From positions 160,529 to 224,528 of the IMG/VR virus record IMGVR_UViG_3300044712_001462: a DNA stretch of 64,000 bases, one strand, 5' to 3'. The notes under the pieces were generated by a model that saw only the letters and a program-made list of their open reading frames with translations, was not told where the DNA came from and searched no databases. This document shows, in pieces, positions 27,023 to 62,101 of the stretch. The first letter of the stretch is position 1, and each line of letters begins with the position of its first letter. A program made the position numbers and the translations under genes.

Positions 27023-30000
27023 TTACGCCATCGAGGCTCTCGACAGCTCTCCACCTCCGCCACCTTGCGGATAAAACTGTCCCCAGAAGTTCTTCATCGT
27101 ATCATCGTCTTTGTCCTGGTTTTGAGCCAAGAGCTGCCCCAACATTGCACTGGTAGCGTTAGGCTCTCCTCCGTCCCGCGCAATCGACGGAGGAACCGGA
27201 TCACGGTAACGCGGACTCAAACCAATCTGCGGAGCGAGTCGGTTATAGTCACTCAGCACATTACTTTTACCGTTCTGCCACAGACCCTTTATCAGATCCG
27301 TAAGACCTCCACCCTGCAGCATCGTGCCTAGACCCTGCATGACTGGGGACTGCGACATGGCATAAGCACCCGGAAATGCGCCTCGTATGCCTTCTTGAAC
27401 ACTATTCTGTACCTGACCTGGCAACTCTTTCATACGCTCATCAACATACTGCTTGCCCTGGTCCATCATCTGCTGACCTCGATCCAGGAACGACTCACCC
27501 ATGGCCTGTCCCTGATCCATAAACTTATTACCCATCGCGTCAGCACGACTTAATGTGTCATTGCGCATGTTGTTGGCCATATAGAGACCCGTGCCCATCA
27601 TGCCCGCACTAGCCGCCACAGGACCGTAGGGAGCCATTGCCTTAGCCGCGGGAGCCGCATTACGAATAACCGTACCAGCACCTTGCCTCAAAGCACCGCC
27701 AGCGCGCCCCACTCCTGAGCGGAAATAACCAGACGCCTGCGCCGCACCCGGAATAGCCTTAGGTAGAGCCTGAGTCGTCATTGACGATGTTCCTGCCGCA
27801 CGTGCAGCATTCAAGCCCGCAAGTGCCTCGGGACTACCGGCAGGGCCATGTGGAACAACCGACCCGCGATAACCACTGGGAACCTGAGGAGATGCAAGAG
27901 GTCGAGCTGCACCCGCATTATTTGCAGCCGCCCTAGCGGCATCATCCGCTGTGTTCATGACACCTTTGGCAACGTCGTCTGTCATCCCAGCCGCACCACG
28001 AGCCACGTCGTCTGCTGAACCTGCTACACCTTTTGCCACATCATCAACACTGCTGACACCCTGTCTAAGCAGACGCGGTGCGAGCGATTTCACACCAGTC
28101 CAGAGACCCTTACCGATCGTTATTGGATTAATCGCTTGTTTCTCCGAAGACAACTTTGTCTGGAACGGACTTTTCGGAGCGGCTAAAGCCGGAGACTTTG
28201 GAACAGCACCGACAGGATTAGCCATCTGGTTGCCACCGGATCCCGGAGGCGAGAACGTGCCATGTGTCTGTTGTATGTTCTTAGGCATTGCCATCTGATT
28301 CATGCTAGGATTGAGTGAAGCGCCCGTAGCAGGGCTGGGTTGAGCCATACTCTTATTCCAGGCTTGAGAGTATTCAGGTGTCATCGCTAACCGCGCATCT
28401 TGTTCAGGTAGACCGGCTTTACGGCGCATTTGACTATCCTGCATGTACGCGGCAACCGGTTCCATAATACGACCATCAGGCCCGTATCCGTACCGATAAG
28501 GTTTACCGTCAGGCTGCGACAACGTGCCACTGGTTTGTTGCATCATCTTACCTCTTGGATCACTGGATCCTGAGCCAGCCATCTGGGGAGCCTGCTGCGG
28601 AGTCATACCCGGTGTTCGTATAACCGGACCAGGATTAGTTCCACCCAGCATATTGCCACCCGCTACATCCTGAGACGGATCAGGCTTACGCACACCTGCC
28701 GTCTGCGGCGCTTGCAACGCGGGATTGTTAGCCATCAGCTCCTGAGATTGCTGCATCTGAGGAGCCTGACCCGGGCTCGCCGGTTGTCCACCCGCTGAAT
28801 AAGTAGGGCTTCCACTTCGACGCATCGCCTCTGCCCGCTCATACTTCTGACGCATCGCTTCGCGCATGCTGATCTGAGCCGGGCTGAGACTGTACTGGGG
28901 CTCTGGTTTTTGCGCTGCCGCGATCATCGGACTGCCGTCAGGCCGCAATACAGGCCTTCCATCCCGACCAAGAACGGGATTTAGTTGTCGGCCCGAGCCA
29001 CCTGCCCTGTTTGGCAAATATCCACCACCAGGTGCGGTCATGGGCATCCCATTCGGACCCATCAGCCGTGTTCCACCGCCAGAAAGCTGATTGTCCACAG
29101 CCTCTCTATTAGCGCGATTACGATTCATGCGTTGCTGAGCACCCCAAGCTTCCTGACCTTGCTGGCTCATGCCGCCGGGCATCACCGGAGCATTAAGGGA
29201 TGCCTCAGTCTCCGCTCTCGCCTTCGCAGAAACTTCATCAGCAGAAAGCCCTTCATAGCCGGGATTAGATGGTGCCGGTCGAGGAATAGGCGCAGCAGGC
29301 GACTCACCAGGTGCTGCACTACCTTGAGCCGGAGCATTCTGTCCAGAGGGCTGTAATTGGTTCGCCTGCCCCATCGCCTGAGGTGCTTGCATCGCAGGAG
29401 CAGGCGGAGCTGTCATCTGCTGAGGCTGACCGCCCACTGTCTGGGTCTGACCGCTATTCGCAAACGAGGGGTTATTCCACTTCGTGTAATCAGGACGCTG
29501 ATCGGGCTGTACACTCTCAGGAGCCTGCGCCTGCATTCGCTCAAGCCTTCGAACTTCACTTCTATTCCCAGCTCGCCGAGCCCGATCAAGCTGAGGCTGG
29601 AAGCGACTCGCCCACTCCGGAGGACCGGCTGGTTGTTGTGGGGCTTGAGGAGTTTGAGCCAAAACAGGCGTCACAGGAGCTTGCAGAGCCGGATTAGCTG
29701 GCGGCTTCGGACCCGCTTGCATCGCATAATCGTTGATCATACCCTCGCCAGACTGCGGAGCGCCTTGCATTGCATAATCGTTTATCATCTCTGTGCCACT
29801 CGGTAAGTCCTTACGCTCACCGACTGGTGAATTCGGATCCCAAGGACCTTGGCCAGCCATCTGATTGGCCAAAGCACCGGCTGACCAGGGCTTCGTAGAG
29901 CGACCTGTCTCATAGTCCTTCGCGCTAACGGGATTGGTGTTATTCGCAATGTCATGCACGACCTGCGGAATCACACCCTGTTGCTGCTCACGATCAAAGG

Positions 30001-31795
30001 CAGGCCCTGGGTGGTATCCTCCAGATCTACCCTGCATAGCACCACCGACAGCATTGAGGCCTAACATATTTTTATTAGCACCGGTCCACCAATTTAGCTT
30101 GTTTCCTAATTCGCTCATTACTGTACCGATTGGTCCGCCCATCCGAGCTAGACCACCACCCAGCAGCGCATACGGAGCCGTATTTAGAGCCTGTTGTGCT
30201 CCACCCATAGCCATGTTTGCACCAGTCCGCAATGCAGTATTCACCGCATCTTGTTTGAACGGCTCAGCCTCTTGCCGAATCTTGTTATATTCGTCACCAG
30301 TAGCAAGCGTCTGTGTGTTGTAGGCATGCTCTGGCCGTTGGGTATAATCCGCATTCATACGCGGATCCACAGAGTGACCCACATCTTTTAAACCCGACCG
30401 CACAGTCCGCAGACCCCACTCCCTGGCTTTATCCGCAAACTCATCCAAGCCAGCTACTGTTTCCGAATTAGGAGCCATCCATTTTAAAGGCTCAGTGACC
30501 AGCTGACCGGCCAAACCGCCTACATTTGCGAGAGCACCCGCGCCAGTAAAGGCCTCACCTTGAAAAGCCCTCCAGGCGTTTTCAGGTCCGCGAGTGTACG
30601 GACCCAGATAGTAATCCCAGCTACGCTGAGCCTGATGATCGTCTATAGCGCTTCGAGCAACACTCTGCCTATTCTGTTGGTCTTCGTAGTCCTGCTGGTA
30701 ATTATTCGCGTTGATACCTCTGGCTAGCCGCTCGTTTTGAGCAAGACCTGACTCTTGTACCTTAGCCCGTAACGCGTCCAGTCCAGGAATCGGAGGAGAT
30801 GCTGCCGCTTGACTTCCCATCGCACTCACCCTCGAGGGAGGAGGCGCTTGCTGGGGCATATCTCTGCGCAACGACTGCGTGAGTTGATCCGCAGCAGACA
30901 GTTGATTACCAGGAGCCGGTTGGCGAATCTGCAGGTCTTTTTCACCGCTCGGCGGCACATAACTGCCGCCAGTAGGATTCGGAACAGGGGCACCTTGAGT
31001 CGGCATGGGTGCTTGCAAAGCGGGATTAGCCGGAGGCACAGAAGGAGCTACAGGCGATGCCGGTGGCTGCTCGGGCGATGGGAGACCAGCTGGGTACTTA
31101 TCCCGTTGAGCCCAGGCAGAATCCACACCACGACCGTAAGAATCATTCTCATACCGAGCAAACGGATTCACCGCGGGATTACCCTGCGGGATATCTTGCT
31201 CCGACACTGGGACCAGCTCCACTGAGCTCTTAAACAAAAACCCACTCTTACCTACCGGTGGCATAATGCTATCCACCTTCTTGTTCCGAGCCACGTCCTC
31301 CAGGCTCACCTCGGGCCCGCGAGCATCTGGAGCGATCTTCCACTTCGGACGAACCTGACCAGAGGCCGCAACGCGCAAAGTACTCGCTAACTTCGTAGGT
31401 AACATCGGGGGAGCCATTCCGTGAGTTGTAACAGAGCCGGGAGTCTGTATTCCCTCTCTGTTCGCAGGTTGAGGATACTGAGGACTTGCTTTCAGAACGG
31501 TACGAGGTGGAACCTTTGAAGTAACAGGACCTTCACCAGGCATATAGATGGCCCCAGCTTTGTTCAGAAGCCCGGGCCCGCCAGGTATAGACGGTTTGTC
31601 CTGTTGGGTCTGCGGCTGCAGATGAGGAAACATCTTGGCTAAGAAAGGATGCACAGGACGACGCTGAACAGCGTTTTGACTCCCCATGCCCAAGACAGAA
31701 GCTGGACTAATCGTTGTCCTGGCCAACTGATCGTTAGAACCGACCGTCGGCATCCGCATGGGATCTTTAGCAAATCCAGCCATTGTGACTTCCAT
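27023..31795 (-). CDS. 1590-aa Pro/Gln/Gly/Ala/Met-rich, largely disordered protein; possible internal virion protein
   Basis: Long ORF with no Cys; internal repeats NPALQAP x3, MINDYAMQ x2, DDVA(K/R)G-type x4. Confidence 0.75.
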   Translation of the reverse strand: MEVTMAGFAKDPMRMPTVGSNDQLARTTISPASVLGMGSQNAVQRRPVHPFLAKMFPHLQPQTQQDKPSIPGGPGLLNKAGAIYMPGEGPVTSKVPPRTVLKASPQYPQPANREGIQTPGSVTTHGMAPPMLPTKLASTLRVAASGQVRPKWKIAPDARGPEVSLEDVARNKKVDSIMPPVGKSGFLFKSSVELVPVSEQDIPQGNPAVNPFARYENDSYGRGVDSAWAQRDKYPAGLPSPEQPPASPVAPSVPPANPALQAPMPTQGAPVPNPTGGSYVPPSGEKDLQIRQPAPGNQLSAADQLTQSLRRDMPQQAPPPSRVSAMGSQAAASPPIPGLDALRAKVQESGLAQNERLARGINANNYQQDYEDQQNRQSVARSAIDDHQAQRSWDYYLGPYTRGPENAWRAFQGEAFTGAGALANVGGLAGQLVTEPLKWMAPNSETVAGLDEFADKAREWGLRTVRSGLKDVGHSVDPRMNADYTQRPEHAYNTQTLATGDEYNKIRQEAEPFKQDAVNTALRTGANMAMGGAQQALNTAPYALLGGGLARMGGPIGTVMSELGNKLNWWTGANKNMLGLNAVGGAMQGRSGGYHPGPAFDREQQQGVIPQVVHDIANNTNPVSAKDYETGRSTKPWSAGALANQMAGQGPWDPNSPVGERKDLPSGTEMINDYAMQGAPQSGEGMINDYAMQAGPKPPANPALQAPVTPVLAQTPQAPQQPAGPPEWASRFQPQLDRARRAGNRSEVRRLERMQAQAPESVQPDQRPDYTKWNNPSFANSGQTQTVGGQPQQMTAPPAPAMQAPQAMGQANQLQPSGQNAPAQGSAAPGESPAAPIPRPAPSNPGYEGLSADEVSAKARAETEASLNAPVMPGGMSQQGQEAWGAQQRMNRNRANREAVDNQLSGGGTRLMGPNGMPMTAPGGGYLPNRAGGSGRQLNPVLGRDGRPVLRPDGSPMIAAAQKPEPQYSLSPAQISMREAMRQKYERAEAMRRSGSPTYSAGGQPASPGQAPQMQQSQELMANNPALQAPQTAGVRKPDPSQDVAGGNMLGGTNPGPVIRTPGMTPQQAPQMAGSGSSDPRGKMMQQTSGTLSQPDGKPYRYGYGPDGRIMEPVAAYMQDSQMRRKAGLPEQDARLAMTPEYSQAWNKSMAQPSPATGASLNPSMNQMAMPKNIQQTHGTFSPPGSGGNQMANPVGAVPKSPALAAPKSPFQTKLSSEKQAINPITIGKGLWTGVKSLAPRLLRQGVSSVDDVAKGVAGSADDVARGAAGMTDDVAKGVMNTADDAARAAANNAGAARPLASPQVPSGYRGSVVPHGPAGSPEALAGLNAARAAGTSSMTTQALPKAIPGAAQASGYFRSGVGRAGGALRQGAGTVIRNAAPAAKAMAPYGPVAASAGMMGTGLYMANNMRNDTLSRADAMGNKFMDQGQAMGESFLDRGQQMMDQGKQYVDERMKELPGQVQNSVQEGIRGAFPGAYAMSQSPVMQGLGTMLQGGGLTDLIKGLWQNGKSNVLSDYNRLAPQIGLSPRYRDPVPPSIARDGGEPNATSAMLGQLLAQNQDKDDDTMKNFWGQFYPQGGGGGELSRASMA

Positions 31796-31879: not shown

Positions 31880-32254
31880 CTACTTAATGAACTCTTGACC
31901 AGCTTTCGTCAGAGAATAATAGCCGTAGCCTTCTCTCCAATCCCGATTAACCAGACCGTCTGCCACATACCCAGCCAGAACTGCTACAGCCTCTCGCCCA
32001 CAACCGGCTACACTCCGAAAAGTGGGAACGTTGATCGAGCGATACTCGTGGATAATCTTCAGGTGATCTGCCACGGTCATGTCGCCCGAATCCTGCACCG
32101 GCTCGGGTTCAGGCTCGGGCTTCTTCTCTACTGCGGATACCGGCTCTGGCGGTTTAACAACAGGTGCCTCCACCACAGGCTCAGAAACAGCATCTACACG
32201 CGTCTCACCAGGCAGAGGCTCGACAGCAAACGGTCTTTCAGGCTTCTTAGCCAT
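31880..32254 (-). CDS. Protein with C-terminal winged-helix-like domain
   Basis: P/E-rich linker, then ...LAGYVADGLV...YYSLTKAGQEFI (wHTH wing signature). Confidence 0.55.
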   Translation of the reverse strand: MAKKPERPFAVEPLPGETRVDAVSEPVVEAPVVKPPEPVSAVEKKPEPEPEPVQDSGDMTVADHLKIIHEYRSINVPTFRSVAGCGREAVAVLAGYVADGLVNRDWREGYGYYSLTKAGQEFIK

Positions 32255-33114
32255 TATTTCCCCTTCTTAGACTTCTTTTTCTTCTTACCACCACAGCCAG
32301 CTGTTTTGAGTTCTGGCTCGGCTCGATCTACTGCTTTACCCAGCAGGAGATTCGATACACCCTTACCCAATCCTTTACCTGCCATCATTCCACCAGCTGC
32401 ACCAACTCCGGTGCCAGCCAGTGCGCTGCCAATACCCGCAGCAGCAGCAAGACCTGGTTTATCTTTCAGCTTTTCAGCCAGTAAAGCACCGAGCACACTT
32501 CCTGCACCCAGACCACCTACCGCACCAACTCCCAAGCCTGCTCCAGCTCCTGCGCCAGGAAGCACACCTTGAGCCGCTCCGCGGATCTTCTGTTTATCAG
32601 GAGCCTGCCCAGCACCATAGGCTGCGCCCAGAACGGCACCGGTAGGCGCAAGGCTCGCGCCAGCACCTAGTGCACCTAAGCCTAAAGCTGCTCCACCGCC
32701 AGCCAACGCCGCACTCGCACCGTTTGAGCCCAGATACTTTTTGATCTTCTCGATAGTGGCCTGCAACTGACTAGGATCCGCAGCTTGCTTAACCGGAGAC
32801 TCTTCTGACATCTGTGGCTTCTTCTGCTTAGGCACTTTGACCTTACCCAGAGCACCCACCACGCTCTCGAAACGAGCATCATCCCAAGACCGACGTGTAA
32901 CTGCTTTCTTTTCGCCTTCCATGGCTTCTTTTCTCTCAGGTAAACCGGTGTGTTTGGTACTCGCAAAATGCTTGGCGTCAGTCTTACTGATCGACTGAGC
33001 GATGTCTGCAATATGTCCGGATGGTGCTTTGGCCTTACCCTGTTGGATAGCATGTACCCAACCGAATAGGCGCTGCTGGCTTCGACTGTGGGCTGGAATA
33101 GTTACACCCTCCAT
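32254..33114 (-). CDS. DUF3008-like N-terminal domain fused to a Gly/Ala-rich hydrophobic (glycine-zipper) region
   Basis: PAHSRSQQRLFG...DAKHFASTKHTGLPERK; GxxxG repeats; start uncertain. Confidence 0.65.
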   Translation of the reverse strand: MEGVTIPAHSRSQQRLFGWVHAIQQGKAKAPSGHIADIAQSISKTDAKHFASTKHTGLPERKEAMEGEKKAVTRRSWDDARFESVVGALGKVKVPKQKKPQMSEESPVKQAADPSQLQATIEKIKKYLGSNGASAALAGGGAALGLGALGAGASLAPTGAVLGAAYGAGQAPDKQKIRGAAQGVLPGAGAGAGLGVGAVGGLGAGSVLGALLAEKLKDKPGLAAAAGIGSALAGTGVGAAGGMMAGKGLGKGVSNLLLGKAVDRAEPELKTAGCGGKKKKKSKKGK

Positions 33115-33176
33115 GACCTGTCTACGGGGTCGTATCACTATAGTATGACCCATCTTAGACACAGCGCGCAAGCCGT

Positions 33177-33812
33177 TTAGATGTCCTCAAGCTCGCTGTC
33201 GTAGTAGTCGTCATCCTCGTCAGACAGCTCATCCAGAGACATTGCTGCTACATCGTCTACGTCTGACTCGCTCAACTTATCGCTCAGCAGATAAAGCCCA
33301 TCCGTCATCCCGTACTGGACAAAGAACTCCGCGATATCCCGTCCCATCTTTCTCCACATGGCCAGCAGGAAGCCGTCGATCGGAACACCCTCGCCTACCT
33401 CTACAGTACTAGGAAACGAGGTCGTCCTATCCTCCCAGCTAATATGAGCCGTCAATCCAACCGCCAGAGGTTTATGCTCTGGAGTCGGAAGCAGCGACAG
33501 AGAGATCATAGGCCAGTACGAATACAGCAGCGAAATGAAGGTAAAAGGATCCTTCAGCGCGGTTTCAAACTCATCGATCTCCTCAGAGTTGAGATCGTAG
33601 GTCGCCATCAGCTCTTCACGGTCTGGAAAGATCTCGTCCCGCTTCTGCAAATACTTGTAGAAGTCCTGCATCGAAACCGTCTTCGCATCGTCCGTGGTTT
33701 TGTCTGTATCTACCAGAAGCTGCCGAAACAGATGGAGAGACAAAGTGTAAGCTGGACTACTGCAGCGCAGATGCTCACGACCCATTGTGGACCTCTCGAT
33801 AATGCGCCTCAT
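33177..33812 (-). CDS. Hypothetical acidic protein
   Basis: ORF track; operon context. Confidence 0.65.
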   Translation of the reverse strand: MRRIIERSTMGREHLRCSSPAYTLSLHLFRQLLVDTDKTTDDAKTVSMQDFYKYLQKRDEIFPDREELMATYDLNSEEIDEFETALKDPFTFISLLYSYWPMISLSLLPTPEHKPLAVGLTAHISWEDRTTSFPSTVEVGEGVPIDGFLLAMWRKMGRDIAEFFVQYGMTDGLYLLSDKLSESDVDDVAAMSLDELSDEDDDYYDSELEDI

Positions 33813-34844
33813 ACCTCTTCAGGGCGGTATGTATTCCATCTAGCGCAGACTGCAGAGAGCTTGTCATGGAGATAAGCTGATCCAGCTTCTGCTCAAAACC
33901 ATACGGATCCACGGTGGGCAGAAAACAGCGATCAAGGAAATCCTCTTCTCGGAACAGCTGCTCTCGAATACGAGCAGTTGCCTGGAGCGGCTCTAAGAGC
34001 TGCTGACAGAACTGACAGAGACCTCCCTGGTCATCCGCTAATCCAGAGGAGATGACTGATCCGCATCCCATGCAAATCGCTGTGTCCATCTTTTACGCCT
34101 CGTCTTTAATCTCTGTAGCCGGAAACAGCACACGCATAGGATCGTTACGTGAGTACCACTCCACCATTTCCTGCTTTATTGCCCACAGAACCCGCTCAAA
34201 GCAATCAGCACAGATGTTGTCTGTCCCGCACTCCGGACAAGGCACACTAGCCATCTTGCACCTTGCTTACTTCACCAGTTCCAGAGCAGGCAAGACACGA
34301 CAAAGGATGCATCAGCCCCCAATCGTAATCCTCACCCCACTGACCCGTCCCACCACAAGACTTGCATTTAAACATCTCAGGCAGCTCACCCAATTCTCGG
34401 AGAGCCGCATGAATCTCCGGCGACTCCAGACAGTCGTCAAAGCACAGCTTGACCAAACTATTCCACATCCAACGCTGGTCCTGAACCGTAGCCTGGTAGC
34501 CAAAGGACAAGCTGTTGTAGATGTGCCTCAGCTCATTCGCGTCCATGTCATACCTTCATTGTGCCCGAGGTATCGATGTTGTTAATCGCATCGTACGCCG
34601 AAGCGCTTCCACCAGGCAGAACCAGGACGCGCACACCGTTCGTCAGAATCAGGCCATAGTTATCGTCAGCCGGATAAACACCTTGAATCCGGTTCTCTTC
34701 CAGGTGCTTCTTAGCAAAACGCAGGAACATCTCCGCCTTCTCGGCTTCTTTCTTACCCACATCTTCAATGCCTGGATTCAGCTCAGCCAGGTTGTCTACA
34801 AAAGCCCCTACCAAGTACTGCAGCAGATCTTGTTCTTCAGACAT
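33775..34844 (-). other. Small hypothetical ORFs (33775..34089 CxxC, 34247..34546 CxxCxGxG Zn-finger, 34548..34844)
   Basis: CMGC..CQFC; CKSCGGTG..CLACSGTG (DnaJ-type Zn motif). Confidence 0.6.
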
Positions 34845-35651: not shown

Positions 35652-35680
35652 ATTATGCCGCAAAAAGGTCAGAAATTTAG
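35652..35680 (-). promoter_or_regulatory. Putative phage promoter, copy 2: CTAAAT-N17-CATAAT
   Basis: Same architecture as copy 1. Confidence 0.65.
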
Positions 35681-38592
35681 GCCGCAGCGGTAGCTGGTGA
35701 CGAGGCATTTGTGGGCCCGCCAAACTGCTGCTGCATGAGCATCGCGCCACCTTGCATTTTTGCTTGATTGCGAATCTGATTCATCTTGGCCTTAACGAGT
35801 GAGTGAAGTACCTCATTCTTCTTGGCCAATGCACGAAGCTCACTATCCTTGACCGGTTCCGGTAAGCCAAGGAGTTCTTGAGCCAGCGACTCAGCTGTCT
35901 GCAACATCTGCTCAGGAGTCTGAGGCATATTGCCACTCGCCATCAGTCCCGTCACTGGCGGAGGCGTCATAGGCATACCCGTCGCCGGATCAACTTGACC
36001 CTGACCGCCAGCCGCAGCAGGATCCGCAGGTTGACCAGCAGGCATACCAGGCTGAGCTGGCATCCCTTGAGCTACTTGCGCACCCATTGCGGACTGATCC
36101 ATCTGTTCTTGCATCTCTTGCTGAGCAGTCTGCTCGGCCATGGCTTCTTCCGATTGCGCCTTAAGCTCGTCTCTGTACTCCAGGCCCAGCGAACGCAGAC
36201 CAGTCGTACGACTTACCAATCCGGTTGTCATCAGTTCCAGCAGAGCCATGTGACGCTGCAGATCGTCTGCGTGAGTAACCCGCTTATGGACTGCTTTGAT
36301 CGACTCCCAGGAAAGAACTCGAGAGATGCGTTCGACGAGCCAATTTAGGAATCGGTTGTTATCGTGAACCAGGTGATGCCATGTCGCCTCAAACAAACGC
36401 AACGAAACCGGGGCCGTCTGCAACTGAAGCGTGCCTTTGTACAACTCTACCGGCGTACCAGCACCGTTGAGCAGAGTCTCCAAGCCCTGATCCAGCAACT
36501 CGCGGGGTGCTAAAGCAGCTGCATCACCGCCCAAAGCCTGATACTGAACAGGGAAGGGGAGTGTGGACCACGAGGCGGGATCTCTGCGGCGCTTACGGAT
36601 CATTGATCGAACTTGGCCCATAAAATCGCCGCCGTTCATCGATAGCAGGGGATCACTAGCCATCCCTCCACTACCTCCCTTTACCGCGGGAGTGATTAGA
36701 CGGAATGGAATTACATAATCCAGAGCAATCGCTTCGTTATACCGGTGGAGAACCTGAACATACCAAGCTTGCCGGAAGTTCGTGAGTAACCGGGTAATAC
36801 CCCAGCCTCGATTCTGTCGACCACCCAGAGTGGCTTCTTTCATGTGATGGATAACACCGGGATGGAACCGGAAAAGCTGATTCTTCTTAATCGCTTCCAT
36901 CACCTGCTGAGGACACCGCTCTAAATGAAACAGCGTTCCTTCCCGTACTTGGCGCTTGTAGTCCTCGGGGATCTTCCAGAGATATGCCACGTCATCCGTG
37001 AACTGGTCATGAAGGATCTCGATGTCGTGTGGCGACCAGTACTTGAGCTTCAAGGCATCTGGGCGATTATCAGGCTCATCCTTCAACTTCCAGGGTCCGC
37101 GGTAGCCTGAACCGGTTTTGCACTTGGGGCACGTCGCCGTAAAGCTGAAGTCATTGCTAAATTTGAATTTGAAGTCTGGGTTCTCGTAGACATTCTTCAG
37201 GACAACCTGAAGACCGCATTTCGGACAACACATAAACCGACGGAAAGGAACCTGCAACGACGTGAACGCATTACCATAGCAGTTGCCGGTTATCACAGCC
37301 TGCTCAACGACAAACGAGTGCGTTTCCATCTCCACACAGCAGAAAACGTCATCTGTTATGCCTGTGGGACGCGCTCCCTTAACGCGGATAAACTGGCCAT
37401 ACGAAGTTGGCTCGAAATTTCTCTCAAACTTCTCTCTATGTTTCTCCAGCAGGAAATCTTGAGGCAACATGAACCGCTTCAATAACGTCACATAGTACAT
37501 AGGGCCTGTATACGACTCCACAGACCCATCCGACCTAACAAAAGACGAGGTTCGCGTATGTTCTCGTACGGGTCCAGTACACATTCCTATTCTCGGCAGT
37601 TGCTCAACTATACGCTCGAGCGTTATGCGAGCACTCTGGGTCAAAAGTGCACAACCGTAAGTATCAACCGACCCATCGGCAGCCAGAAATCCGCAAACGA
37701 ACCCGTACCAGTAACTGGCACTTTTATCATTCTCTGGTAGATCCTTATACCTGGCCGGTAGGCCGTTCTTAACAGCCATCTCCTCCCGGGACGGTGGCCG
37801 AGTCACTTCAGAACCATACCCGTCGAAGTAGGGTAGTACCTCAATTTTATCCCCAAAGAAACAGGCCGCTGACTGACACCCTTCGTTATACCGAGTACCA
37901 TCTCCAAACACGAAACCGTGGCGTACACCTTCCCGGAATTCCTCATTCTGTTCGGGACGCGGCGCTACCGTGCGCTCAATCCGATGGCCATCAATCAGCT
38001 TTGTAGTGGGAATACGCACTAATTTGTTAGTACTATTCTTAACGATCCACTCATGCTCTGGTGTAGCCAGCACCGTTCTGCCGTCGCTAAACTCGACCTC
38101 CCACAGCGGCTGGCGTCCAAATGCCTTGAACGTTGCCGGACGATAAACTCCACCTTCGGAAAGCACATCAACTGTCTGACCCTCCAGATCGCGCAGTTTG
38201 AACACCCCGTTGCGTGTAACTGCCTTCACGTCACCGTGAAAGCACATACGATCCATGCCGCGTTCGAACAAAAACGGCATGACACCAATATTGGTAAACA
38301 GGTTCTGCCACTTCTCTTTCTCGTCGTCCCCCAGCGTATCTCGAGAGTCCGTGGCTCCGAAATCTACGTCTGTCAGGAAGTAGGCCACGATGCGCTGCAT
38401 GGCCATCTTGTAAGTCGACTGAGCCTCGAACACATACTCAGCCATCTTCAAAACGCTGCGGATATCCTCCGGCATCGAGAGACTGGCCATATCCAGCCAC
38501 GGGCTCGGAAACGCATCGGACCCCCTCGCGCTACTAGCCCAACCACCAGCCGGATCCATCTGCGAGCGCATTGTAAACAGACTCATATTCAT
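35677..38592 (-). CDS. Portal-like protein with intein and Zn-ribbon insertion
   Basis: After splicing reads RGMDRM-CYGNAF (portal-type GNAF motif); IHHMK...RGWGI; long Q/P/M-rich C-terminal tail. Confidence 0.6.
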   Translation of the reverse strand: MNMSLFTMRSQMDPAGGWASSARGSDAFPSPWLDMASLSMPEDIRSVLKMAEYVFEAQSTYKMAMQRIVAYFLTDVDFGATDSRDTLGDDEKEKWQNLFTNIGVMPFLFERGMDRMCFHGDVKAVTRNGVFKLRDLEGQTVDVLSEGGVYRPATFKAFGRQPLWEVEFSDGRTVLATPEHEWIVKNSTNKLVRIPTTKLIDGHRIERTVAPRPEQNEEFREGVRHGFVFGDGTRYNEGCQSAACFFGDKIEVLPYFDGYGSEVTRPPSREEMAVKNGLPARYKDLPENDKSASYWYGFVCGFLAADGSVDTYGCALLTQSARITLERIVEQLPRIGMCTGPVREHTRTSSFVRSDGSVESYTGPMYYVTLLKRFMLPQDFLLEKHREKFERNFEPTSYGQFIRVKGARPTGITDDVFCCVEMETHSFVVEQAVITGNCYGNAFTSLQVPFRRFMCCPKCGLQVVLKNVYENPDFKFKFSNDFSFTATCPKCKTGSGYRGPWKLKDEPDNRPDALKLKYWSPHDIEILHDQFTDDVAYLWKIPEDYKRQVREGTLFHLERCPQQVMEAIKKNQLFRFHPGVIHHMKEATLGGRQNRGWGITRLLTNFRQAWYVQVLHRYNEAIALDYVIPFRLITPAVKGGSGGMASDPLLSMNGGDFMGQVRSMIRKRRRDPASWSTLPFPVQYQALGGDAAALAPRELLDQGLETLLNGAGTPVELYKGTLQLQTAPVSLRLFEATWHHLVHDNNRFLNWLVERISRVLSWESIKAVHKRVTHADDLQRHMALLELMTTGLVSRTTGLRSLGLEYRDELKAQSEEAMAEQTAQQEMQEQMDQSAMGAQVAQGMPAQPGMPAGQPADPAAAGGQGQVDPATGMPMTPPPVTGLMASGNMPQTPEQMLQTAESLAQELLGLPEPVKDSELRALAKKNEVLHSLVKAKMNQIRNQAKMQGGAMLMQQQFGGPTNASSPATAAA
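37282..38244 (-). mobile_element. Intein (321 aa) with LAGLIDADG homing endonuclease
   Basis: Block A CFHGDV, block B ATPEHEW, HGFVFGDG and GFLAADG motifs, block F DVFC, C-terminal VITGN/C. Confidence 0.9.
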
Positions 38593-38603
38593 CCCTGACG
38601 CAT

Positions 38604-38631
38604 AAAAAAAGGCGATACCAGAGGCACCGCC
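38604..38631 (-). terminator. Intrinsic terminator
   Basis: GGCGGTGCC-TCT-GGTATCGCC stem (G-U pairs) followed by T7. Confidence 0.65.
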
Positions 38632-38663
38632 ATTATCCTGGAGAGGAGCTGCTCAGCGCAAAG

Positions 38664-38858
38664 TCAATTACGGCAGCAACCGCCGTCCCTGAAAGCTTTT
38701 AAAGCTTCTGCATTGTCCGATCGGCAGCAACAAGCAGCTTTATCCGCCAGCCGCTTACAAACATGCTCCTCCAGCTGGTCCGCCGAAGCGCACTTTGTTT
38801 CATCCTCGGGAGGGGTCACACCCTGTTCGATCGCACCTGTTTTTACCATTTCATCCAT
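38664..38858 (-). CDS. Small Cys-rich hypothetical protein
   Basis: GGAGG SD; overlaps upstream stop. Confidence 0.6.
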   Translation of the reverse strand: MDEMVKTGAIEQGVTPPEDETKCASADQLEEHVCKRLADKAACCCRSDNAEALKAFRDGGCCRN

Positions 38859-57633: not shown

Positions 57634-60600
57634 TTAGGCGACTTTGATATATCCGCGGTGCGGAATCCAGATTTTCTTGGTGTCACCACCCTTGATAAAT
57701 CCATCTTCATACTGTGTCCAACCCGCATACTTCGGGTCTAGATCAATTGCAAAACAATCATCCGGGGTCATCGAAACACCCCAGGACTGCACAACTTTCG
57801 TATCCACGCCGAAGTGATACGGCCCAGTTCCGAGCGGAACACCATCCATAGACGTGGGATATAGTGGCACTCGCTCACACATGCACAGCGGCAATATTTC
57901 TGTGAGCACTTTCGGCACATGTTTAGCCGGAGCCATGACCATCAAAGCATCATGCACCTGTAGACAGATGCGGTAATCAATATCATCAGCGGTTGCGCCT
58001 GCGGCCCAGGCGTTCTCGCGGTAGTCATAGAGTTCCGCCACAGCCAGACTGATGGCATCTGCCACCATTCCCTGAATGGGAAAATTCATCGACTGGCGCT
58101 CAAACTCACCCCGCTGTTTGGCCAACCTGATAGCCGGAAACCGTCGGTAACGACCAAATGGGCTACACAACCAACGGGGTACCACATCCGGGTTGCTGTC
58201 CGGATGCGCTGCCAGGAACTTTTCTCGCGACCAGTGGTCAGGTCCTACCGCTCTCCAGCGACACTCATCAAACAACGTTGACAGACTGGGGTAAAGCGCA
58301 TCGAGCGCAGCAACGATTCGCTCGGCATCCGAGACCGAAACAAACACACCCTCTTCTTGAGCACCCAGCGCAATCGCCTTAGGACCTCGACCGTAAGCTC
58401 GGCCGAATATCACGGCCTTGGCTACAATCCGCATGTGTGCTTTATCGATAGAAGCCAGACCGGCTTTTGTAGGCGGGCAATCGAACCCGAACGCTAACAC
58501 CGCCACATTCGAATGAATGTCGTAGTAATTCGGATGATCTTCTGGCAGCTGATTGCGTAACGCATGATCCAACATCACCGGATCGCCTGACAAAATCGCC
58601 ATTACAAACAGCTCAGCACCAACATAGTCGGCCTCTACCAGGCACCAGCCAGGCGGAGCGCAAAGAACACTGCGCAGGGGAGACACATACTGATCACCCA
58701 GAATCCGCTTATAATCGGGTTCACGGCGTGCGCTGAGATTCTGCAGAGGCGGCCGAGCTGACGACCACCGGCCGGTTTCCTTGGTCTGGTAGATCGTGGT
58801 ACGAACTCTGCCATCACCACATACCCAGCTGGGCAACCCTTTGTCATACATCAGGTTCCCGTCATCATCATGCTGATAGGACACACCCCCGCTTTCGTCA
58901 TCTTCAGACATCGGAGGCCGGAGCACTGACTTCAAAACCTGACTGATAAAGCGGTAATCCCGGATCCAGCCGATCGGCTTTCTCAGATTCCGAACTACCC
59001 ATTCACCCTTCCGCCACACCTTCAGCTTATCCGAGCCATGCCACAGAATACCGAGCGTCATCTTATCGGTACCGGGTGTGGCTTCATCTTCCTTCTTTGC
59101 TTCAACCACCTCACTCCATTGCTTCACAGGTTTACCGGTTGCCACCAGTGGCTCTGTGGCAATCGACTTTGCACCCTTGGGTCTTAGCCTGGGGCGCTTT
59201 CCTTTCACCTTCTCCTTCCCGTTGTACTTTCTTCCAAACAACAACTCGCGAACTTCAAACGGAGAGTTCAAGTTGAGATTAGGCCAACAAGCCCAAGTCT
59301 TAATCTTCCTCTCCAGCTCGTTCTTCGCATGCATGTACCGCTCAGTCAGGGTCGCAACTCGTTCGCGATCCAAGACCAAACCAGTACGGGTGATCTCCAA
59401 TACTGCCAGCGTAGCCTTCTGGCTAATCCAGTACGGCTTCCAACAGTTATTACCAAACTCATCCGCATACAACGCTTTCATGTGCCGCATACATAGGCGA
59501 TACGTCACATCCGCGTCATAAGCGCCGTAAGGTACCAGGATCTCGTCAGGGCAGTCTCCGTAGCCTTCCAGAGCCGCCTTCTCGATACCTTGCTGCCGAC
59601 AGTAATCCGATTTCCACTGATTCAATATCGCGTCGTAGCGAGGCGCTGTCGTGTAAGTGAGAACTTGTCCTGTTAACGAGAAGTCGCCTGTCTCATCCAG
59701 GGCATGCGCCATTAAGGCAGTATCCAAACCGCCTTTCTCTGGCATCTCTTCCCAGGTAGCTGGAGCTGCGAACTGCTTTCTCAGATCCAGGCCCGCCGGA
59801 ACGAGCCATTCCAAGTCAGCCACGAAGTAGTGTCCACAAGGACGCTTGTCCTCCATGAACTTCGACAGGATCTTCATCGCCCGAGCCTGTCCACCATCCG
59901 TCGTAAACTGTTTCTTCCAAACCTTTCCGTCCTTGCGCACAAACTGCTTGAATGCAGGGGCACCCCCAGCATGATTCAGTTTGATGACCGCGGCTTTCTT
60001 CTCTGCCCAGCTCAGCTGAACCGTTCTCAGATAGGCTCCAGGGTTTTCCGGATGGTCACCGTGCCACTCGGCATCCATGGCGATGATGCGGTTGGTGGTG
60101 GTCTGGTTAATCTCTTCACAGAGAGCCAGTAATTGTGCCTCATCTTCAATCAGCCGGTGATCCAGACCTTCCTCAGAGACACAACCATTACCGCCTGCCA
60201 CCAGATCAGAGAATCTGCGTAAAGCCTCCGTGAACTGAGGAGCCGCATCCGGCTTATGCACAATGGCTGACGGGTGCATACAAGCCATCGCTTTGACCTT
60301 GAGCGGTGGAGTGTCATCCTCCTCGCTCGTCGCCATTGAGAACTCAAGATCGATTACCTGGCCCGCAATACCAGTCAAAGTAGCCTGCTTACCGCAGAAC
60401 ACCTTTACCGCTTCCGAGCCCAACATCAGGATGAACTTCGGCTTTACCAGCCTGATTTCCTGCTGCAAGAGAAAAGCCTGGTCCGCAATCCAACGAGGCT
60501 TAATCGCCCCTTCCCCATTTATGAGGTGCTGCGTCTTCAAAACACCCGTTACATACCAGCGCCGGTAATCCGCCACACCCAGCTTCGCGAGAGTCTTCAG

Positions 60601-61014
60601 TAGTTCATTACCCGACTCGTCAGAGAACCACCGACACTTCTGCGCATCGTCCGTGGTCAACGTCTTACCTACTACCATTACGTCACAGGGCTCAGGACCA
60701 CGGGAGCGCCAATCATTGTTCTCTCCACAGTTCCAGCGATGCCCTGAGACGACGTTAAACATCTCTGATCGGCCTGCCTTCGTCTTCAGTGCCAGATGTA
60801 ACTGACCCCTCCCATACAAGGCATTCTCGATCAAGGCTTCCAGCTTCTTACCCACTGTCTGTAGGCGCTGGACCCGTCCCTTCTTATCCGCCACAACCTC
60901 TGTGTCATCACCCAGAGCCGTGGCAGCCAACAAAAACTCTTCACCAGGAATAGGCATCCCTGGCGCTGTAATCGGAAACAACGCAGCCACTCTACTCCTG
61001 CTTTCGTCTAGCAA
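57634..61014 (-). CDS. polA: Family A DNA polymerase with N-terminal UDG-like domain and 3'-5' exonuclease
   Basis: UDG4-like EIRLVKPKFILMLG and HPSA; exonuclease DAEW, YGAYD; polymerase TGRWSS, ADYVGAE, RIVAKAVIFGRAYG, NFPIQG, QVHD. Confidence 0.92.
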   Translation of the reverse strand: MLDESRSRVAALFPITAPGMPIPGEEFLLAATALGDDTEVVADKKGRVQRLQTVGKKLEALIENALYGRGQLHLALKTKAGRSEMFNVVSGHRWNCGENNDWRSRGPEPCDVMVVGKTLTTDDAQKCRWFSDESGNELLKTLAKLGVADYRRWYVTGVLKTQHLINGEGAIKPRWIADQAFLLQQEIRLVKPKFILMLGSEAVKVFCGKQATLTGIAGQVIDLEFSMATSEEDDTPPLKVKAMACMHPSAIVHKPDAAPQFTEALRRFSDLVAGGNGCVSEEGLDHRLIEDEAQLLALCEEINQTTTNRIIAMDAEWHGDHPENPGAYLRTVQLSWAEKKAAVIKLNHAGGAPAFKQFVRKDGKVWKKQFTTDGGQARAMKILSKFMEDKRPCGHYFVADLEWLVPAGLDLRKQFAAPATWEEMPEKGGLDTALMAHALDETGDFSLTGQVLTYTTAPRYDAILNQWKSDYCRQQGIEKAALEGYGDCPDEILVPYGAYDADVTYRLCMRHMKALYADEFGNNCWKPYWISQKATLAVLEITRTGLVLDRERVATLTERYMHAKNELERKIKTWACWPNLNLNSPFEVRELLFGRKYNGKEKVKGKRPRLRPKGAKSIATEPLVATGKPVKQWSEVVEAKKEDEATPGTDKMTLGILWHGSDKLKVWRKGEWVVRNLRKPIGWIRDYRFISQVLKSVLRPPMSEDDESGGVSYQHDDDGNLMYDKGLPSWVCGDGRVRTTIYQTKETGRWSSARPPLQNLSARREPDYKRILGDQYVSPLRSVLCAPPGWCLVEADYVGAELFVMAILSGDPVMLDHALRNQLPEDHPNYYDIHSNVAVLAFGFDCPPTKAGLASIDKAHMRIVAKAVIFGRAYGRGPKAIALGAQEEGVFVSVSDAERIVAALDALYPSLSTLFDECRWRAVGPDHWSREKFLAAHPDSNPDVVPRWLCSPFGRYRRFPAIRLAKQRGEFERQSMNFPIQGMVADAISLAVAELYDYRENAWAAGATADDIDYRICLQVHDALMVMAPAKHVPKVLTEILPLCMCERVPLYPTSMDGVPLGTGPYHFGVDTKVVQSWGVSMTPDDCFAIDLDPKYAGWTQYEDGFIKGGDTKKIWIPHRGYIKVA

Positions 61015-62101
61015 AACTCACTTTTAACTTCCTCCGTGCCGCCTCCGCCTGGATGAGTTTGCGCATGTAGATGCGATCCATCATTCCAGGATCTGTTCCA
61101 GGCGGCAGATAGATGGGAACAACTTTCCCGGCCAACCTGGGCTGAGCGCTCAGAGCCTCGAACGCTTTCGCGATATGATGCGGCTGCCCTTCTTTGTGAT
61201 CCGGAGGTAAATCCGGATCCAACATCAGCACAACTACATCCTCTTTCTCCACCATTTCCACAATCAAACGAATCTGAGCCGGGGCCACGCTCTTACCCAG
61301 TAGCCCCATCGCCTGCGCACCGAAGTTCCACACATCCGACGGGCCTTCCACAATCACTTTTGTGCTGTACCGAATAGCATTGTCGTAGTTGTACAACACC
61401 TCGCCTTTGCGAATCCCCGGCGTGGTAAACCACTTTGGGCCCATGTTGTCATCATCCAGCACCCGACGACACTGCCAGCCCATCAGCTGATTCTTCATAA
61501 TGATCGGGGCATACAGCCGATTACGACACAGTGCATAATGCGACTCAATGATGTAGCCCACCCCGAACGTTTCAGCGACATACCGTGGATCAATCAGACG
61601 ATCCCACAAATACTTCAGAGCCGGGTGATTAGGATTCGTCTTGCAGATGTCTTTGAGCGACCAGGGTGGGCCCGGAGCCACTATCGCTTCACCCCGAGGC
61701 AATCTCTTCTTCTGTGTTTTAATAGAAGACAAATCCACCGATCCGCTGCGGCAATCTTTGAGCCATTCCCACAGCTTCAACCCACCACCGCTGGCTAAAC
61801 ACTGCTCGTTGTAGCACTGTGCCAGCCAAAGGTTGCGATTACACGTGTGCCTATCCGGCTTCCCCCAGCGATGATTGATGTACAGTCGCTTCCGCGTATC
61901 CCCACAAAACGGACAAGAGATGCGATATTCCTCCCCAGATACAACAGGGTCAAGCTTCTCGTAGGACTGCTTGACCCCATTTGCTCTCCGGGTGAATTGC
62001 TGATACGAGGCTTCCATCTCCAGGCCCTCGTTTACGATCGTCACATGCTCTTCTCCTCCTAATCGATTCACCAACTGTCGATACAACTTCCGATTTAGCA
62101 T
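60992..62101 (-). CDS. DNA primase (Zn finger plus TOPRIM)
   Basis: CPFC..CYNEQC; IVEGPSD; MLDPD; GTDPG. Confidence 0.85.
   Translation of the reverse strand: MLNRKLYRQLVNRLGGEEHVTIVNEGLEMEASYQQFTRRANGVKQSYEKLDPVVSGEEYRISCPFCGDTRKRLYINHRWGKPDRHTCNRNLWLAQCYNEQCLASGGGLKLWEWLKDCRSGSVDLSSIKTQKKRLPRGEAIVAPGPPWSLKDICKTNPNHPALKYLWDRLIDPRYVAETFGVGYIIESHYALCRNRLYAPIIMKNQLMGWQCRRVLDDDNMGPKWFTTPGIRKGEVLYNYDNAIRYSTKVIVEGPSDVWNFGAQAMGLLGKSVAPAQIRLIVEMVEKEDVVVLMLDPDLPPDHKEGQPHHIAKAFEALSAQPRLAGKVVPIYLPPGTDPGMMDRIYMRKLIQAEAARRKLKVSFARRKQE

What the first reader, a model, noticed from the sequence alone, without database searches (positions are those of the whole stretch)
35677..38592. Homing-endonuclease intein inside a portal-like protein that also has a Zn-ribbon insertion
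Seen: a 321-aa intein (38244-37282) with two LAGLIDADG motifs, Cys1, terminal Gly-Asn (no penultimate His) and Cys+1, inserted directly before YGNAF. It is followed in the extein by CPKC-x~30-CPKC. Established: phage inteins mostly occupy terminases, helicases, polymerases and RNRs; structural hosts are less common. Inference: splicing gates head assembly, and a metal-binding insertion in a portal is atypical. No terminase is adjacent in this window.
Basis: partly seen in the sequence, partly recalled or inferred. Interest (0 to 1): 0.6.

Follow-up and report, generated by a model that had tools for sequence, protein, structure and literature searches.

The report
Mobile intein in jumbo-phage portal gene
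The gene is the portal (DNA entry/exit ring) protein of an uncultivated 224-kb soil phage, interrupted by a self-splicing, self-spreading intein; a near-identical phage carries the same gene without it. Inteins in portal genes are already known, so this is a well-documented new example and not a new kind of thing.

Summary
ORF 35677-38592 (-) encodes 971 aa. Residues 117-437 (window 37282-38244) are a LAGLIDADG intein with Cys1, TxxH, Gly-Asn end and Cys+1. CPKC-x28-CPKC follows 18 residues into the C-extein.

The zinc ribbon is not an insertion of this gene. It is a trait of the whole portal clade (more than 1000 metagenomic homologs, Arash and Vibrio phages included).

The intein belongs to a family of at least 183 portal inteins, all at the same ..|C-Y-G-N site. 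Intein and extein divergence are decoupled. An activated-sludge metagenome holds a roughly 94% identical gene lacking exactly these 963 bases. So this is a mobile homing intein.

It combines Cys1/Cys+1 with the class 3 Trp-Cys-Thr triplet and has no penultimate His, a rare but reported combination. Regulated gating of head assembly has no support. Portal inteins are already known in mycobacteriophages. Verdict: new member of a known kind, moderately interesting.

The parts
35677..38592 (-). Portal precursor gene, 971 aa including the intein; the only portal homolog in the 224,528-bp genome
38245..38592 (-). N-extein, aa 1-116 (N-terminal wing helices of the portal); ends ..GMDRM
   Evidence: helices 42-116 in the model of homolog P0003
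37282..38244 (-). Intein, 321 aa (Hint splicing domain with a nested LAGLIDADG endonuclease)
   Evidence: Clean insertion relative to intein-free homologs. AF2 pLDDT 97.4. Foldseek top hits are TliVMA intein, PI-PfuI and PI-SceI, E 1e-14 to 1e-11. Exactly this 963-nt block is skipped in a contig of run X2.
38221..38244 (-). Block A, CFHGDVKA; Cys1 is invariant in 111 family members
38047..38064 (-). Block B, TPEHEW: Thr61 (B:7), His64 (B:10), Trp66 (B:12), all invariant
   Evidence: (aligned to ATKDHKF of DnaE inteins)
37897..37920 (-). First LAGLIDADG motif, HGFVFGDG; catalytic Asp115 is kept in at least 90% of the family
37672..37704 (-). Second LAGLIDADG motif, GFVCGFLAADG; catalytic Asp190 is kept in at least 90% of the family. 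Matches I-Tsp061I (2dch).
37312..37347 (-). Block F, VFCCVEMETHSF: Cys302 at F:4 (invariant, where class 1 inteins have Asp), His309 (F:13), Phe311 (F:15)
   Evidence: block numbering from PMC2807308
37279..37302 (-). Block G plus the +1 residue, QAVITGN|C: Thr319 (G:5), Gly320 in place of the penultimate His, Asn321, Cys+1 (Cys438)
35677..37281 (-). C-extein, aa 438-971 plus stop: rest of the wing, stem, clip, crown and C-terminal helices of the portal
37120..37227 (-). Four-Cys zinc ribbon, CPKC-x28-CPKC (Cys456, 459, 488, 491); the first knuckle lies 18 residues after the splice junction
   Evidence: Conserved in the clade. Each knuckle follows a beta-strand in the P0003 model, pLDDT above 90. 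Weak structural resemblance to Zn-ribbon families (lead only).
35914..36096 (-). Low-complexity Gln/Gly/Pro/Ala-rich linker before the conserved C-terminal helices
   Evidence: pLDDT below 50 at the matching place in the model

Best explanation
This is the single portal gene of a roughly 224-kb uncultivated tailed phage from soil or rhizosphere, interrupted in frame by a mobile LAGLIDADG intein. After translation the 321-residue intein cuts itself out and joins Met116 to Cys438. That restores the strand that leads into the clade's conserved zinc ribbon in the portal wing. Only spliced protein can form the portal ring. At the DNA level, the intein's endonuclease most likely cuts intein-free portal alleles at the conserved ..(Met)-Cys-Tyr-Gly-Asn site during co-infection and is copied in by repair (homing). 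That would explain why the same intein family sits at the same site in portals only 20-30% identical to each other. Shown here: the insertion, the portal fold of the extein, the intein and endonuclease fold, conservation of all splice and nuclease residues, the presence/absence polymorphism, and the intein-extein discordance. Inferred: that it splices (and does so constitutively), that the nuclease is active, and that the ribbon binds zinc.

For: Intein identity. There is a clean 321-aa insertion relative to homologs. The AF2 model has pLDDT 97.4. Foldseek hits are TliVMA, PI-PfuI and PI-SceI inteins at E 1e-14 to 1e-11, then I-DmoI. Cys1, Thr61, His64, Trp66 and Cys302 are invariant; His309 and both LAGLIDADG Asp are kept in at least 90% of 111 sequences.

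Mobility. 183 proteins carry this intein; every one whose junction could be read (about 117) has it at the same site. Intein identity exceeds extein identity in 95% of 6328 pairs, and the discordance runs both ways: exteins 98.5% identical with inteins 67% identical, and inteins 85.5% identical with exteins 40% identical. The extein tree needs at least 11 changes of intein state. A contig from an activated-sludge run skips exactly the 963 nt, with about 94-95% identity in the flanks, while two other rhizosphere runs hold 100%-identical contigs that span the two intein-extein junctions (both in X3, the N-terminal one in X4).

Necessity of splicing. The genome has only one portal homolog.
Against: No experiment shows splicing or cleavage. 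Pfam's Intein_splicing model scores below its cut-off on this sequence (21.9 vs 35.8 bits), although many family members carry it in precomputed annotation. The penultimate His and the block F Asp, which assist class 1 splicing, are absent. GC content of the intein (51.4%) barely differs from the exteins (54%), so there is no compositional sign of recent arrival. The portal fold was shown on a homolog, not on the joined exteins themselves, because that join was deliberately not made. The samples behind searches come from two searches with different biases.
Confidence: 0.85

Rival explanations
1. The intein splices by the class 3 route, or can use either route. The block F Cys302, not Cys1, would make the first attack on the N-terminal junction, forming a block F branched thioester that is passed to Cys+1.
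For: The full class 3 Trp-Cys-Thr triplet is present and conserved: Trp66 (B:12) and Cys302 (F:4) are invariant, and Thr319 (G:5) is kept in at least 90%. Positions are as defined in PMC2807308 and PMC5050341. The penultimate His is absent throughout the family. The best-identity structural match of the splicing domain is the class 3 Msm DnaB intein 6bs8, at 22% over 97 columns.
Against: Cys1 is invariant in 111 diverged sequences, so it is under selection, whereas class 3 inteins are defined by lacking it (PMC7664689). The +1 residue is Cys, while all but one known class 3 intein have Ser or Thr. In actinobacteriophages, class 3 inteins were found in only four extein types; the passages read do not say which class the portal inteins there belong to. 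Block F numbering here rests on motif spacing, not on a superposition.
Confidence: 0.3
2. Splicing is conditional and times portal maturation, and so procapsid initiation. The switch would be redox or zinc: disulfides among Cys1, Cys302/303 and Cys+1, or competition with the neighbouring extein zinc ribbon.
For: Four cysteines cluster at the active site, and a four-Cys ribbon begins 18 residues into the C-extein. Redox-sensitive splicing has been reported for a class 3 DnaB intein (abstract of PMC6195587). Replacing the penultimate Gly by His changed splicing in a mycobacteriophage intein (PMC5050341).
Against: There is no direct evidence. Intein-free alleles are the majority of the clade, and a near-identical intein-free phage exists, so the phage needs no such switch. 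The discordant phylogeny fits a selfish element. The same genome has inteins in two unrelated genes.
Confidence: 0.1
3. The intein is a decaying relic: it still splices, but its endonuclease is dead and it is inherited only vertically.
For: There is no compositional difference from the host gene. Intein presence is clustered on the extein tree: 11 changes against about 43 for shuffled labels.
Against: Both catalytic Asp residues and the whole 321-aa length are conserved. No mini-intein derivatives were seen among 183 hits. Nearly identical exteins carry 67%-identical inteins, and very different exteins carry 85%-identical inteins. There is a presence/absence polymorphism at about 94% flank identity.
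Confidence: 0.1
4. The host protein is not the portal but another ring-forming or structural protein with a similar fold.
For: No Pfam, PHROGs v4 or NCBIfam portal model matches it. The gene is not next to the terminase.
Confidence: 0.03

Closest known systems
Portal-protein inteins of cluster C1 mycobacteriophages and other actinobacteriophages (Kelley et al. 2016, PMC5050341; bioRxiv 10.1101/2025.01.02.630785)
   Same: A LAGLIDADG intein inside a tailed-phage portal gene. A non-His penultimate residue (Gly, Lys or Ser) is common in phage inteins. Distribution is patchy, and intein and extein trees disagree.
   Different: The portal family is unrelated at sequence level: it matches no Pfam, PHROGs or NCBIfam portal model, whereas those hosts carry InterPro IPR009279. 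The insertion site is different, the phages are jumbo phages from soil, sludge and water metagenomes, and this intein carries the WCT triplet together with Cys1.
Class 3 inteins (mycobacteriophage Bethlehem DnaB intein; M. smegmatis DnaB1 intein, PDB 6bs8)
   Same: Trp at B:12, Cys at F:4 and Thr at G:5. Phage association. 6bs8 is the splicing-domain match with the highest identity (22%).
   Different: Those inteins lack an N-terminal nucleophile and nearly all have Ser or Thr at +1. This family has invariant Cys1 and Cys+1. It resembles the three 'WCT inteins that begin with Ser1 or Cys1' that PMC2807308 mentions as unresolved.
PI-SceI, PI-PfuI and TliVMA homing-endonuclease inteins (PDB 1vde, 1dq3, 7qsu)
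   Same: Two-domain architecture: a Hint splicing domain with a nested double-LAGLIDADG endonuclease. These are the best whole-chain structural matches (TM 0.56-0.68 by query).
   Different: Only 10-14% sequence identity. This intein is shorter (321 vs 366-454 aa). Those are classical class 1 inteins with Asp at F:4 and a penultimate His (my own knowledge, not tested here).
Salmonella phage Arash gp204 portal protein and the Vibrio phage D181/D148/D69 homologs
   Same: Same portal clade (28-30% identity over about 370 aa, E 1e-40 to 1e-54). Same Y/L-G-N motif and the same CPxC...CPxC zinc ribbon. These phages also share the fused RNA polymerase beta/beta' gene.
   Different: They have no intein, a shorter C-terminal region and genomes of 180-187 kb. 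The residue matching Cys+1 is Thr in Arash and Ala in D181.
Canonical tailed-phage portal fold (lambda gpB 8xow, T4 gp20 3ja7, HK97, SPP1 gp6, G20c)
   Different: About 10% identity. This family adds a four-Cys ribbon in the beta-rich wing region, a long low-complexity linker and extra C-terminal helices.

Membership tests
Intein (Hint-domain protein-splicing element) | In-frame insertion that is absent from orthologs, at a conserved site | tested here: met
   Alignment A1 shows a clean 321-aa block. A contig of run X2 skips exactly 963 nt.
Intein (Hint-domain protein-splicing element) | Block A N-terminal Cys or Ser, block B TxxH, C-terminal Asn or Gln, and a +1 Cys, Ser or Thr | tested here: met
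   Cys1, Thr61-x-x-His64, Asn321 and Cys438. Cys1, Thr61 and His64 are invariant in 111 sequences. Every aligned intein ends in Asn or Gln (Gln in roughly a fifth), and +1 is Cys in all but three, which have Thr.
Intein (Hint-domain protein-splicing element) | Hint fold | tested here: met
   AF2 pLDDT 97.4. Foldseek matches are inteins at probability 1.00, E down to 1.5e-14.
Intein (Hint-domain protein-splicing element) | Score above the curated Pfam or NCBIfam cut-off | tested here: not met
   PF14890 scores 21.9 bits against a cut-off of 35.8. TIGR01445 scores 14.1 against 24.5. Many close family members do carry PF14890 in precomputed annotation.
Intein (Hint-domain protein-splicing element) | Demonstrated protein splicing | not testable with these tools
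   Needs expression of the precursor.
Class 1 intein | Cys1 or Ser1 nucleophile | tested here: met
   Cys1 is invariant.
Class 1 intein | Usual assisting residues: Asp at F:4 and a penultimate His at G:6 | tested here: not met
   Cys302 is at F:4 and Gly320 at G:6. Both residues are typical but not obligatory for class 1 (PMC7664689; PMC5050341).
Class 3 intein | Trp (B:12), Cys (F:4), Thr (G:5) triplet | tested here: met
   Trp66, Cys302 and Thr319. Numbering follows. F:4 was assigned by motif spacing, not by superposition.
Class 3 intein | No N-terminal Cys, Ser or Thr nucleophile | tested here: not met
   Cys1 is invariant. I therefore do not file it as class 3.
Class 3 intein | The block F Cys is the obligate first nucleophile | not testable with these tools
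   Needs C1A and C302A mutants.
LAGLIDADG homing endonuclease (double-motif, monomeric) | Two LAGLIDADG helices, each ending in a catalytic acidic residue | tested here: met
   The motifs are ..FGDG and ..AADG. Asp115 and Asp190 are kept in at least 90% of 111 sequences.
LAGLIDADG homing endonuclease (double-motif, monomeric) | Endonuclease fold | tested here: met
   Matches to I-DmoI, I-Tsp061I and the nuclease domains of PI-SceI and PI-PfuI.
LAGLIDADG homing endonuclease (double-motif, monomeric) | Site-specific cleavage of the empty allele and homing | not testable with these tools
   Only indirect support: intein-extein discordance and presence/absence polymorphism.
Tailed-phage portal protein | Portal fold (wing, stem, clip, crown) | tested here: met
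Tailed-phage portal protein | Present in virions at the unique vertex, as a dodecamer | not testable with these tools
   Indirect support only: the 28%-identical Arash gp204 was found in virions by mass spectrometry. No oligomer model was made.
Tailed-phage portal protein | Match to a curated portal family model | tested here: not met
   No Pfam, PHROGs v4 or NCBIfam portal hit. The family is not represented in those libraries.
Zinc ribbon | Two CxxC knuckles, each on a beta-hairpin, conserved among relatives | tested here: met
   Cys456/459 and Cys488/491. In the P0003 model, beta-strands come directly before each knuckle, at pLDDT above 90. 121 of 138 relatives keep both knuckles, and 15 have lost them.
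Zinc ribbon | Bound metal | not testable with these tools
   Needs metal analysis or a solved structure.

The most novel reading that the evidence does not exclude
The intein is a mechanistic hybrid. It keeps both the class 1 nucleophile (Cys1) and the class 3 block F nucleophile (Cys302, within the Trp-Cys-Thr triplet). Together with Cys303, Cys+1 and the extein zinc ribbon 18 residues downstream, this would form a redox- or zinc-sensitive switch, making portal maturation, and so procapsid initiation, conditional. The ribbon itself would be a previously undescribed metal-binding module of a portal wing.
Probability: 0.1. Interest if true: 0.7.

Novelty: new member of a known kind. Interest (0 to 1): 0.4.

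Why it matters
First, it gives a function to a large family of unannotated proteins. More than 1000 metagenomic clusters that no Pfam, PHROGs or NCBIfam model recognises are the portal of a widespread clade of 180-240 kb phages. That portal carries a conserved four-Cys ribbon that appears unreported for portals.

Second, it offers a natural system for studying intein homing among phages. There is one conserved site, 183 or more intein variants, a second site in the same gene, portals with two inteins, and a near-isogenic intein-free allele in the environment.

Third, the family has invariant Cys1 plus the full class 3 triplet. [quoted passage not shown] None of this changes what is known about inteins in kind.

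Tried and rejected
- **Family scans:** Pfam, PHROGs and NCBIfam scans of the whole protein, both exteins and homolog P0003 found no portal family.
- **PDB sequence searches:** A profile of the portal family against PDB sequences gave only a spurious low-complexity match. phmmer of the block F/G segment against PDB found nothing, so the block F numbering rests on motif spacing.
- **Composition:** GC and GC3 of the intein against the exteins gave no useful signal of recent transfer.
- **tRNA scan:** The window has no tRNA genes.
- **Atlas look-alikes:** For residues 438-520 only weak zinc-ribbon leads came back (TM 0.4-0.49). They are not used as evidence.
- **Joined exteins:** The exteins were searched separately by reference, and the natural intein-free homolog P0003 stood in for the spliced product in the fold.
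- **Large representative search:** Not used, because the word search and the fold settled the identity.
- **Complex prediction:** No dimer or dodecamer prediction was sent.
- **Operators' limits on reads:** Read laying was given 4501 letters, within the 6000-letter limit.
- **Rejected reading:** 'Zinc ribbon as an insertion of this gene' is rejected; it is clade-wide.
- **Rejected reading:** 'Class 3 intein' as a filing is rejected, because Cys1 is present.
Full report
**1. What is in the sequence**

The window is the last 64 kb of a 224,528-bp virus record, G000:C1:160529-224528, rated 100% complete. Almost all its genes lie on the minus strand, and GC skew is negative throughout.

ORF 35677-38592 (-) is open for 971 codons.
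- The intein is residues 117-437 (window 37282-38244). It starts CFHGD and ends ITGN.
- The next residue is Cys438, in CYGNAF.
- The two LAGLIDADG-type motifs are HGFVFGDG and GFVCGFLAADG.
- The penultimate residue is Gly.
- CPKC-x28-CPKC (Cys456/459 and Cys488/491) begins 18 residues into the C-extein.

**2. The host protein is a portal**

Curated libraries do not recognise the exteins. Pfam, PHROGs v4 and NCBIfam give nothing for the whole protein, either extein, or an intein-free homolog.

Nearly all are unnamed. Most are 605-660 aa, and they sit on metagenomic contigs of up to 236 kb.

I folded the closest natural intein-free homolog instead: P0003, 660 aa, 77-79% identical, with an alignment of 110 intein-free relatives. 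The model has mean pLDDT 78.7, and the core is mostly at 90-97.
- Foldseek against the PDB gave 117 matches at E<=0.001. Every match listed is a phage, archaeal-virus or GTA portal.

Independent support comes from cultured phages. tblastn against GenBank phages hits Salmonella phage Arash gp204, annotated 'portal protein' (28% identity, E 2e-40), and three Vibrio phages (30%). Arash gp204 was detected in purified virions with 32 unique peptides and 877 spectra (PMC10585845).

The genome holds only one homolog of this protein.

**3. The zinc ribbon is a clade trait, not an insertion of this gene**

The four cysteines are nearly invariant in the alignments. Of 138 relatives where the region could be located, 121 keep both knuckles, 2 keep one and 15 have lost them. 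In most of the 15, the second Cys of each knuckle is replaced (CPKTG...CPxTG), which looks like decay of the ligands on a retained scaffold.

Arash (CPNC...CPAC) and Vibrio phage D181 (CPNC...CPSC) have the ribbon too. In the P0003 model each knuckle directly follows a beta-strand, in the beta-rich part of the wing, at pLDDT above 90.

A part-search of the ESM Atlas returned zinc-ribbon families only at TM 0.4-0.49. I treat that as a lead and no more. A literature search found no report of a zinc-binding portal, but that is not proof of absence. Metal binding itself is inferred.

**4. The insertion is an intein with an intact endonuclease**

Against intein-free homologs, the 321 residues are one clean block between the residue before a conserved Cys and that Cys..DR-M | intein | C-YGN.

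A search with the intein region found 183 proteins. Every one of the roughly 117 whose junction could be read carries the intein at the same site, followed by C-(Y/F)-G-N.

An alignment of 111 of these inteins shows:
- invariant: Cys1, Thr61, His64, Trp66, His109-Gly110, Cys302 and Glu305;
- kept in at least 90%: Asp115 and Asp190 (the two catalytic LAGLIDADG aspartates), Cys303, His309 and Thr319.

The AF2 model is very confident (pLDDT 97.4, pTM 0.94). Its best PDB matches are homing-endonuclease inteins: TliVMA 7qsu (E 1.5e-14), PI-PfuI and PI-SceI. Free LAGLIDADG enzymes (I-DmoI, I-Tsp061I) and mini-inteins follow.

Sequence profiles reach only weak scores. PF14890 scores 21.9 bits, below its cut-off of 35.8, and DnaE inteins match at E about 1e-3. 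The case therefore rests on the insertion geometry, the motifs and the fold.

**5. An unusual splice-site signature**

The alignment to DnaE inteins (ATKDHKF against ATPEHEW) places Thr61 at B:7, His64 at B:10 and Trp66 at B:12. For the C-terminal blocks I used the numbering of PMC2807308. The block F strand V-F-C-C fits the usual V-Y-D-L pattern. That puts Cys302 at F:4, His309 at F:13 and Phe311 at F:15. Thr319 is G:5, Gly320 is G:6 and Asn321 is G:7.

So the family carries the complete Trp-Cys-Thr triplet that defines class 3 inteins (PMC2807308, PMC5050341, PMC7664689). It also lacks the penultimate His. Yet Cys1 is invariant and the +1 residue is Cys. Class 3 inteins by definition lack the N-terminal nucleophile, and all but one have Ser or Thr at +1.

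PMC2807308 noted three such 'WCT inteins that begin with Ser1 or Cys1' among 37 and left their mechanism open. I therefore file this intein as class 1-like with a class 3 triplet. I do not file it as class 3. Which cysteine starts the reaction cannot be decided in silico.

Roughly a fifth of the family ends in Gln instead of Asn, and three members have Thr at +1.

**6. The intein is mobile**

- **Decoupled divergence.** Among 113 intein-bearing portals, intein identity exceeds identity of the first 400 C-extein residues in 95% of 6328 pairs. Median intein identity only rises from 54% to 63% as extein identity rises from 20-30% to 70-80%.
- **Discordance in both directions.** P0183 and P0203 have exteins 98.5% identical but inteins 67% identical. 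P0139 and P0148 have inteins 85.5% identical but exteins 40% identical.
- **Repeated gain or loss.** On a FastTree of 159 C-extein cores, intein presence needs at least 11 changes, against about 43 for shuffled labels. The sample is biased, so this is a minimum, not a rate.
- **A natural empty allele.** The probable source sample is a rhizosphere metagenome (X1). Two other rhizosphere runs hold 100%-identical contigs that span intein-extein junctions: both junctions in X3, the N-terminal one in X4. In an activated-sludge run from a different study (X2), a 1536-nt contig lies on 36328-37277 and 38241-38825 and skips exactly 963 nt. It shows 82 differences over 1535 aligned bases.
- **The joint is exact.** The 4-base ambiguity of that joint is the TGCT shared by the first codons of the intein and of the C-extein. 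This is the precise intein-free allele in a roughly 94-95% identical phage.

Most intein-free alleles keep the Cys that an intein would need at +1 (95 of 110). The closest one, P0003, has Ala-Ala at the junction. That could be a resistant allele, but this is speculation.

The intein's GC content does not stand out from the gene.

**7. How it most likely works**

The precursor is translated with the intein sitting at the end of a wing helix and the start of the hairpin that leads into the first zinc knuckle (model of P0003). The intein folds independently and excises itself, joining Met116 to Cys438. The spliced 650-aa protein then forms the portal ring.

At the DNA level, the endonuclease cuts empty alleles in co-infecting relatives and the intein is copied in by repair. 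Splicing is necessary for a functional portal, because the gene is single-copy. But nothing indicates regulation. Intein-free alleles dominate the clade, and a near-isogenic intein-free phage exists. I give regulated gating about 0.1.

**8. Comparison with what is known, and novelty**

Portal inteins were reported in cluster C1 mycobacteriophages (PMC5050341). In actinobacteriophages they form five separate groups (bioRxiv 10.1101/2025.01.02.630785). So 'intein in a portal' is not new. Four things are new here:
- the host family, an unannotated portal clade bearing a zinc ribbon;
- the insertion site;
- the size and breadth of this intein family;
- the Cys1-plus-WCT signature conserved over the whole family.

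I rate it a new member of a known kind, interest 0.4.

**9. Context seen on the way**

- The large terminase is at G000:27449-29308 (+) (phrog_675 E 4.8e-56; GpA_ATPase above cut-off). It is far from the portal.
- The genome has at least two more inteins: one in a fused RNA polymerase beta/beta' gene of 1911 aa, and one in a 638-aa protein with a weak AAA+ lid match.
- The portal family has a second intein site, after Trp and before Cys near residue 50. Some members carry inteins at both sites (1315-1336 aa).

Noticed in passing
L008 (G000:C1:116475-122210, minus strand; outside the window): A 1911-aa fused RNA polymerase beta/beta' gene (Rpb2 and Rpb1 domains) carries its own intein (LAGLIDADG_2 plus Intein_splicing) at about residues 1093-1500. 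The Arash homolog gp206, a virion protein, aligns on both sides of that stretch and lacks it.
   Followed up: partly
L009 (G000:C1:142787-144703, minus strand; outside the window): A 638-aa protein with a third intein (LAGLIDADG_3 at 53 bits and Intein_splicing at 50 bits, both above cut-off). Its only extein hit is a weak AAA+ lid match below cut-off. The genome therefore holds at least three inteins of different endonuclease subfamilies.
   Followed up: partly
L010 (G000:C1:27449-29308, plus strand; outside the window): The large terminase subunit (phrog_675 E 4.8e-56, GpA_ATPase 32 bits) lies about 168 kb from the portal on the record, or about 53 kb if the ends are joined, and on the opposite strand.
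   Followed up: yes
Family alignment A1; proteins P0060, P0079, P0097, P0121 (site A) and P0123, P0134, P0225 (two inteins): The same portal family has a second intein insertion site, after a conserved Trp and before Cys near residue 50, occupied by a different, larger LAGLIDADG_3 intein. Some portals of 1315-1336 aa carry inteins at both sites. The window's gene has Met-Ala at site A, so it has no +1 nucleophile there.
   Followed up: partly
Proteins P0183 and P0203: The C-extein cores are 98.5% identical but the inteins only 67% identical. This looks like replacement of one intein variant by another in an otherwise identical portal gene.
   Followed up: no
window 57634-61014 (-), 60992-62101 (-), 62101-63744 (-): A replication block. 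The 1126-aa family A DNA polymerase has an N-terminal uracil-DNA-glycosylase-superfamily domain and a 3'-5' exonuclease. It is preceded by weak, below-cut-off matches to DnaG-like primase and DnaB-like helicase.
   Followed up: partly
window 27023-31795 (-): A 1590-aa ORF a few genes downstream of the portal has no Pfam or PHROGs match. It is not the homolog of Arash gp206, which maps elsewhere in the genome.
   Followed up: partly
window 33775-34546 (-): Three small Cys-rich ORFs lie just downstream of the portal: 104, 53 and 99 aa. The 99-aa one has two CxxCxGxG motifs like those of the DnaJ zinc-finger domain. Whether they are real genes was not checked.
   Followed up: no
window 32254-33171 (-): A 305-aa ORF with an N-terminal DUF3008-like segment (matches five PHROGs of unknown function), a long Gly/Ala-rich region and a Lys-rich tail.
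   Followed up: no
whole window and genome: There is strong strand bias: 146 of 200 ORFs of at least 150 aa are on the minus strand, and GC skew is uniformly negative across all 64 kb. The window has no tRNA genes. None of the portal's immediate neighbours that were scanned (five ORFs) has a named family.
   Followed up: partly
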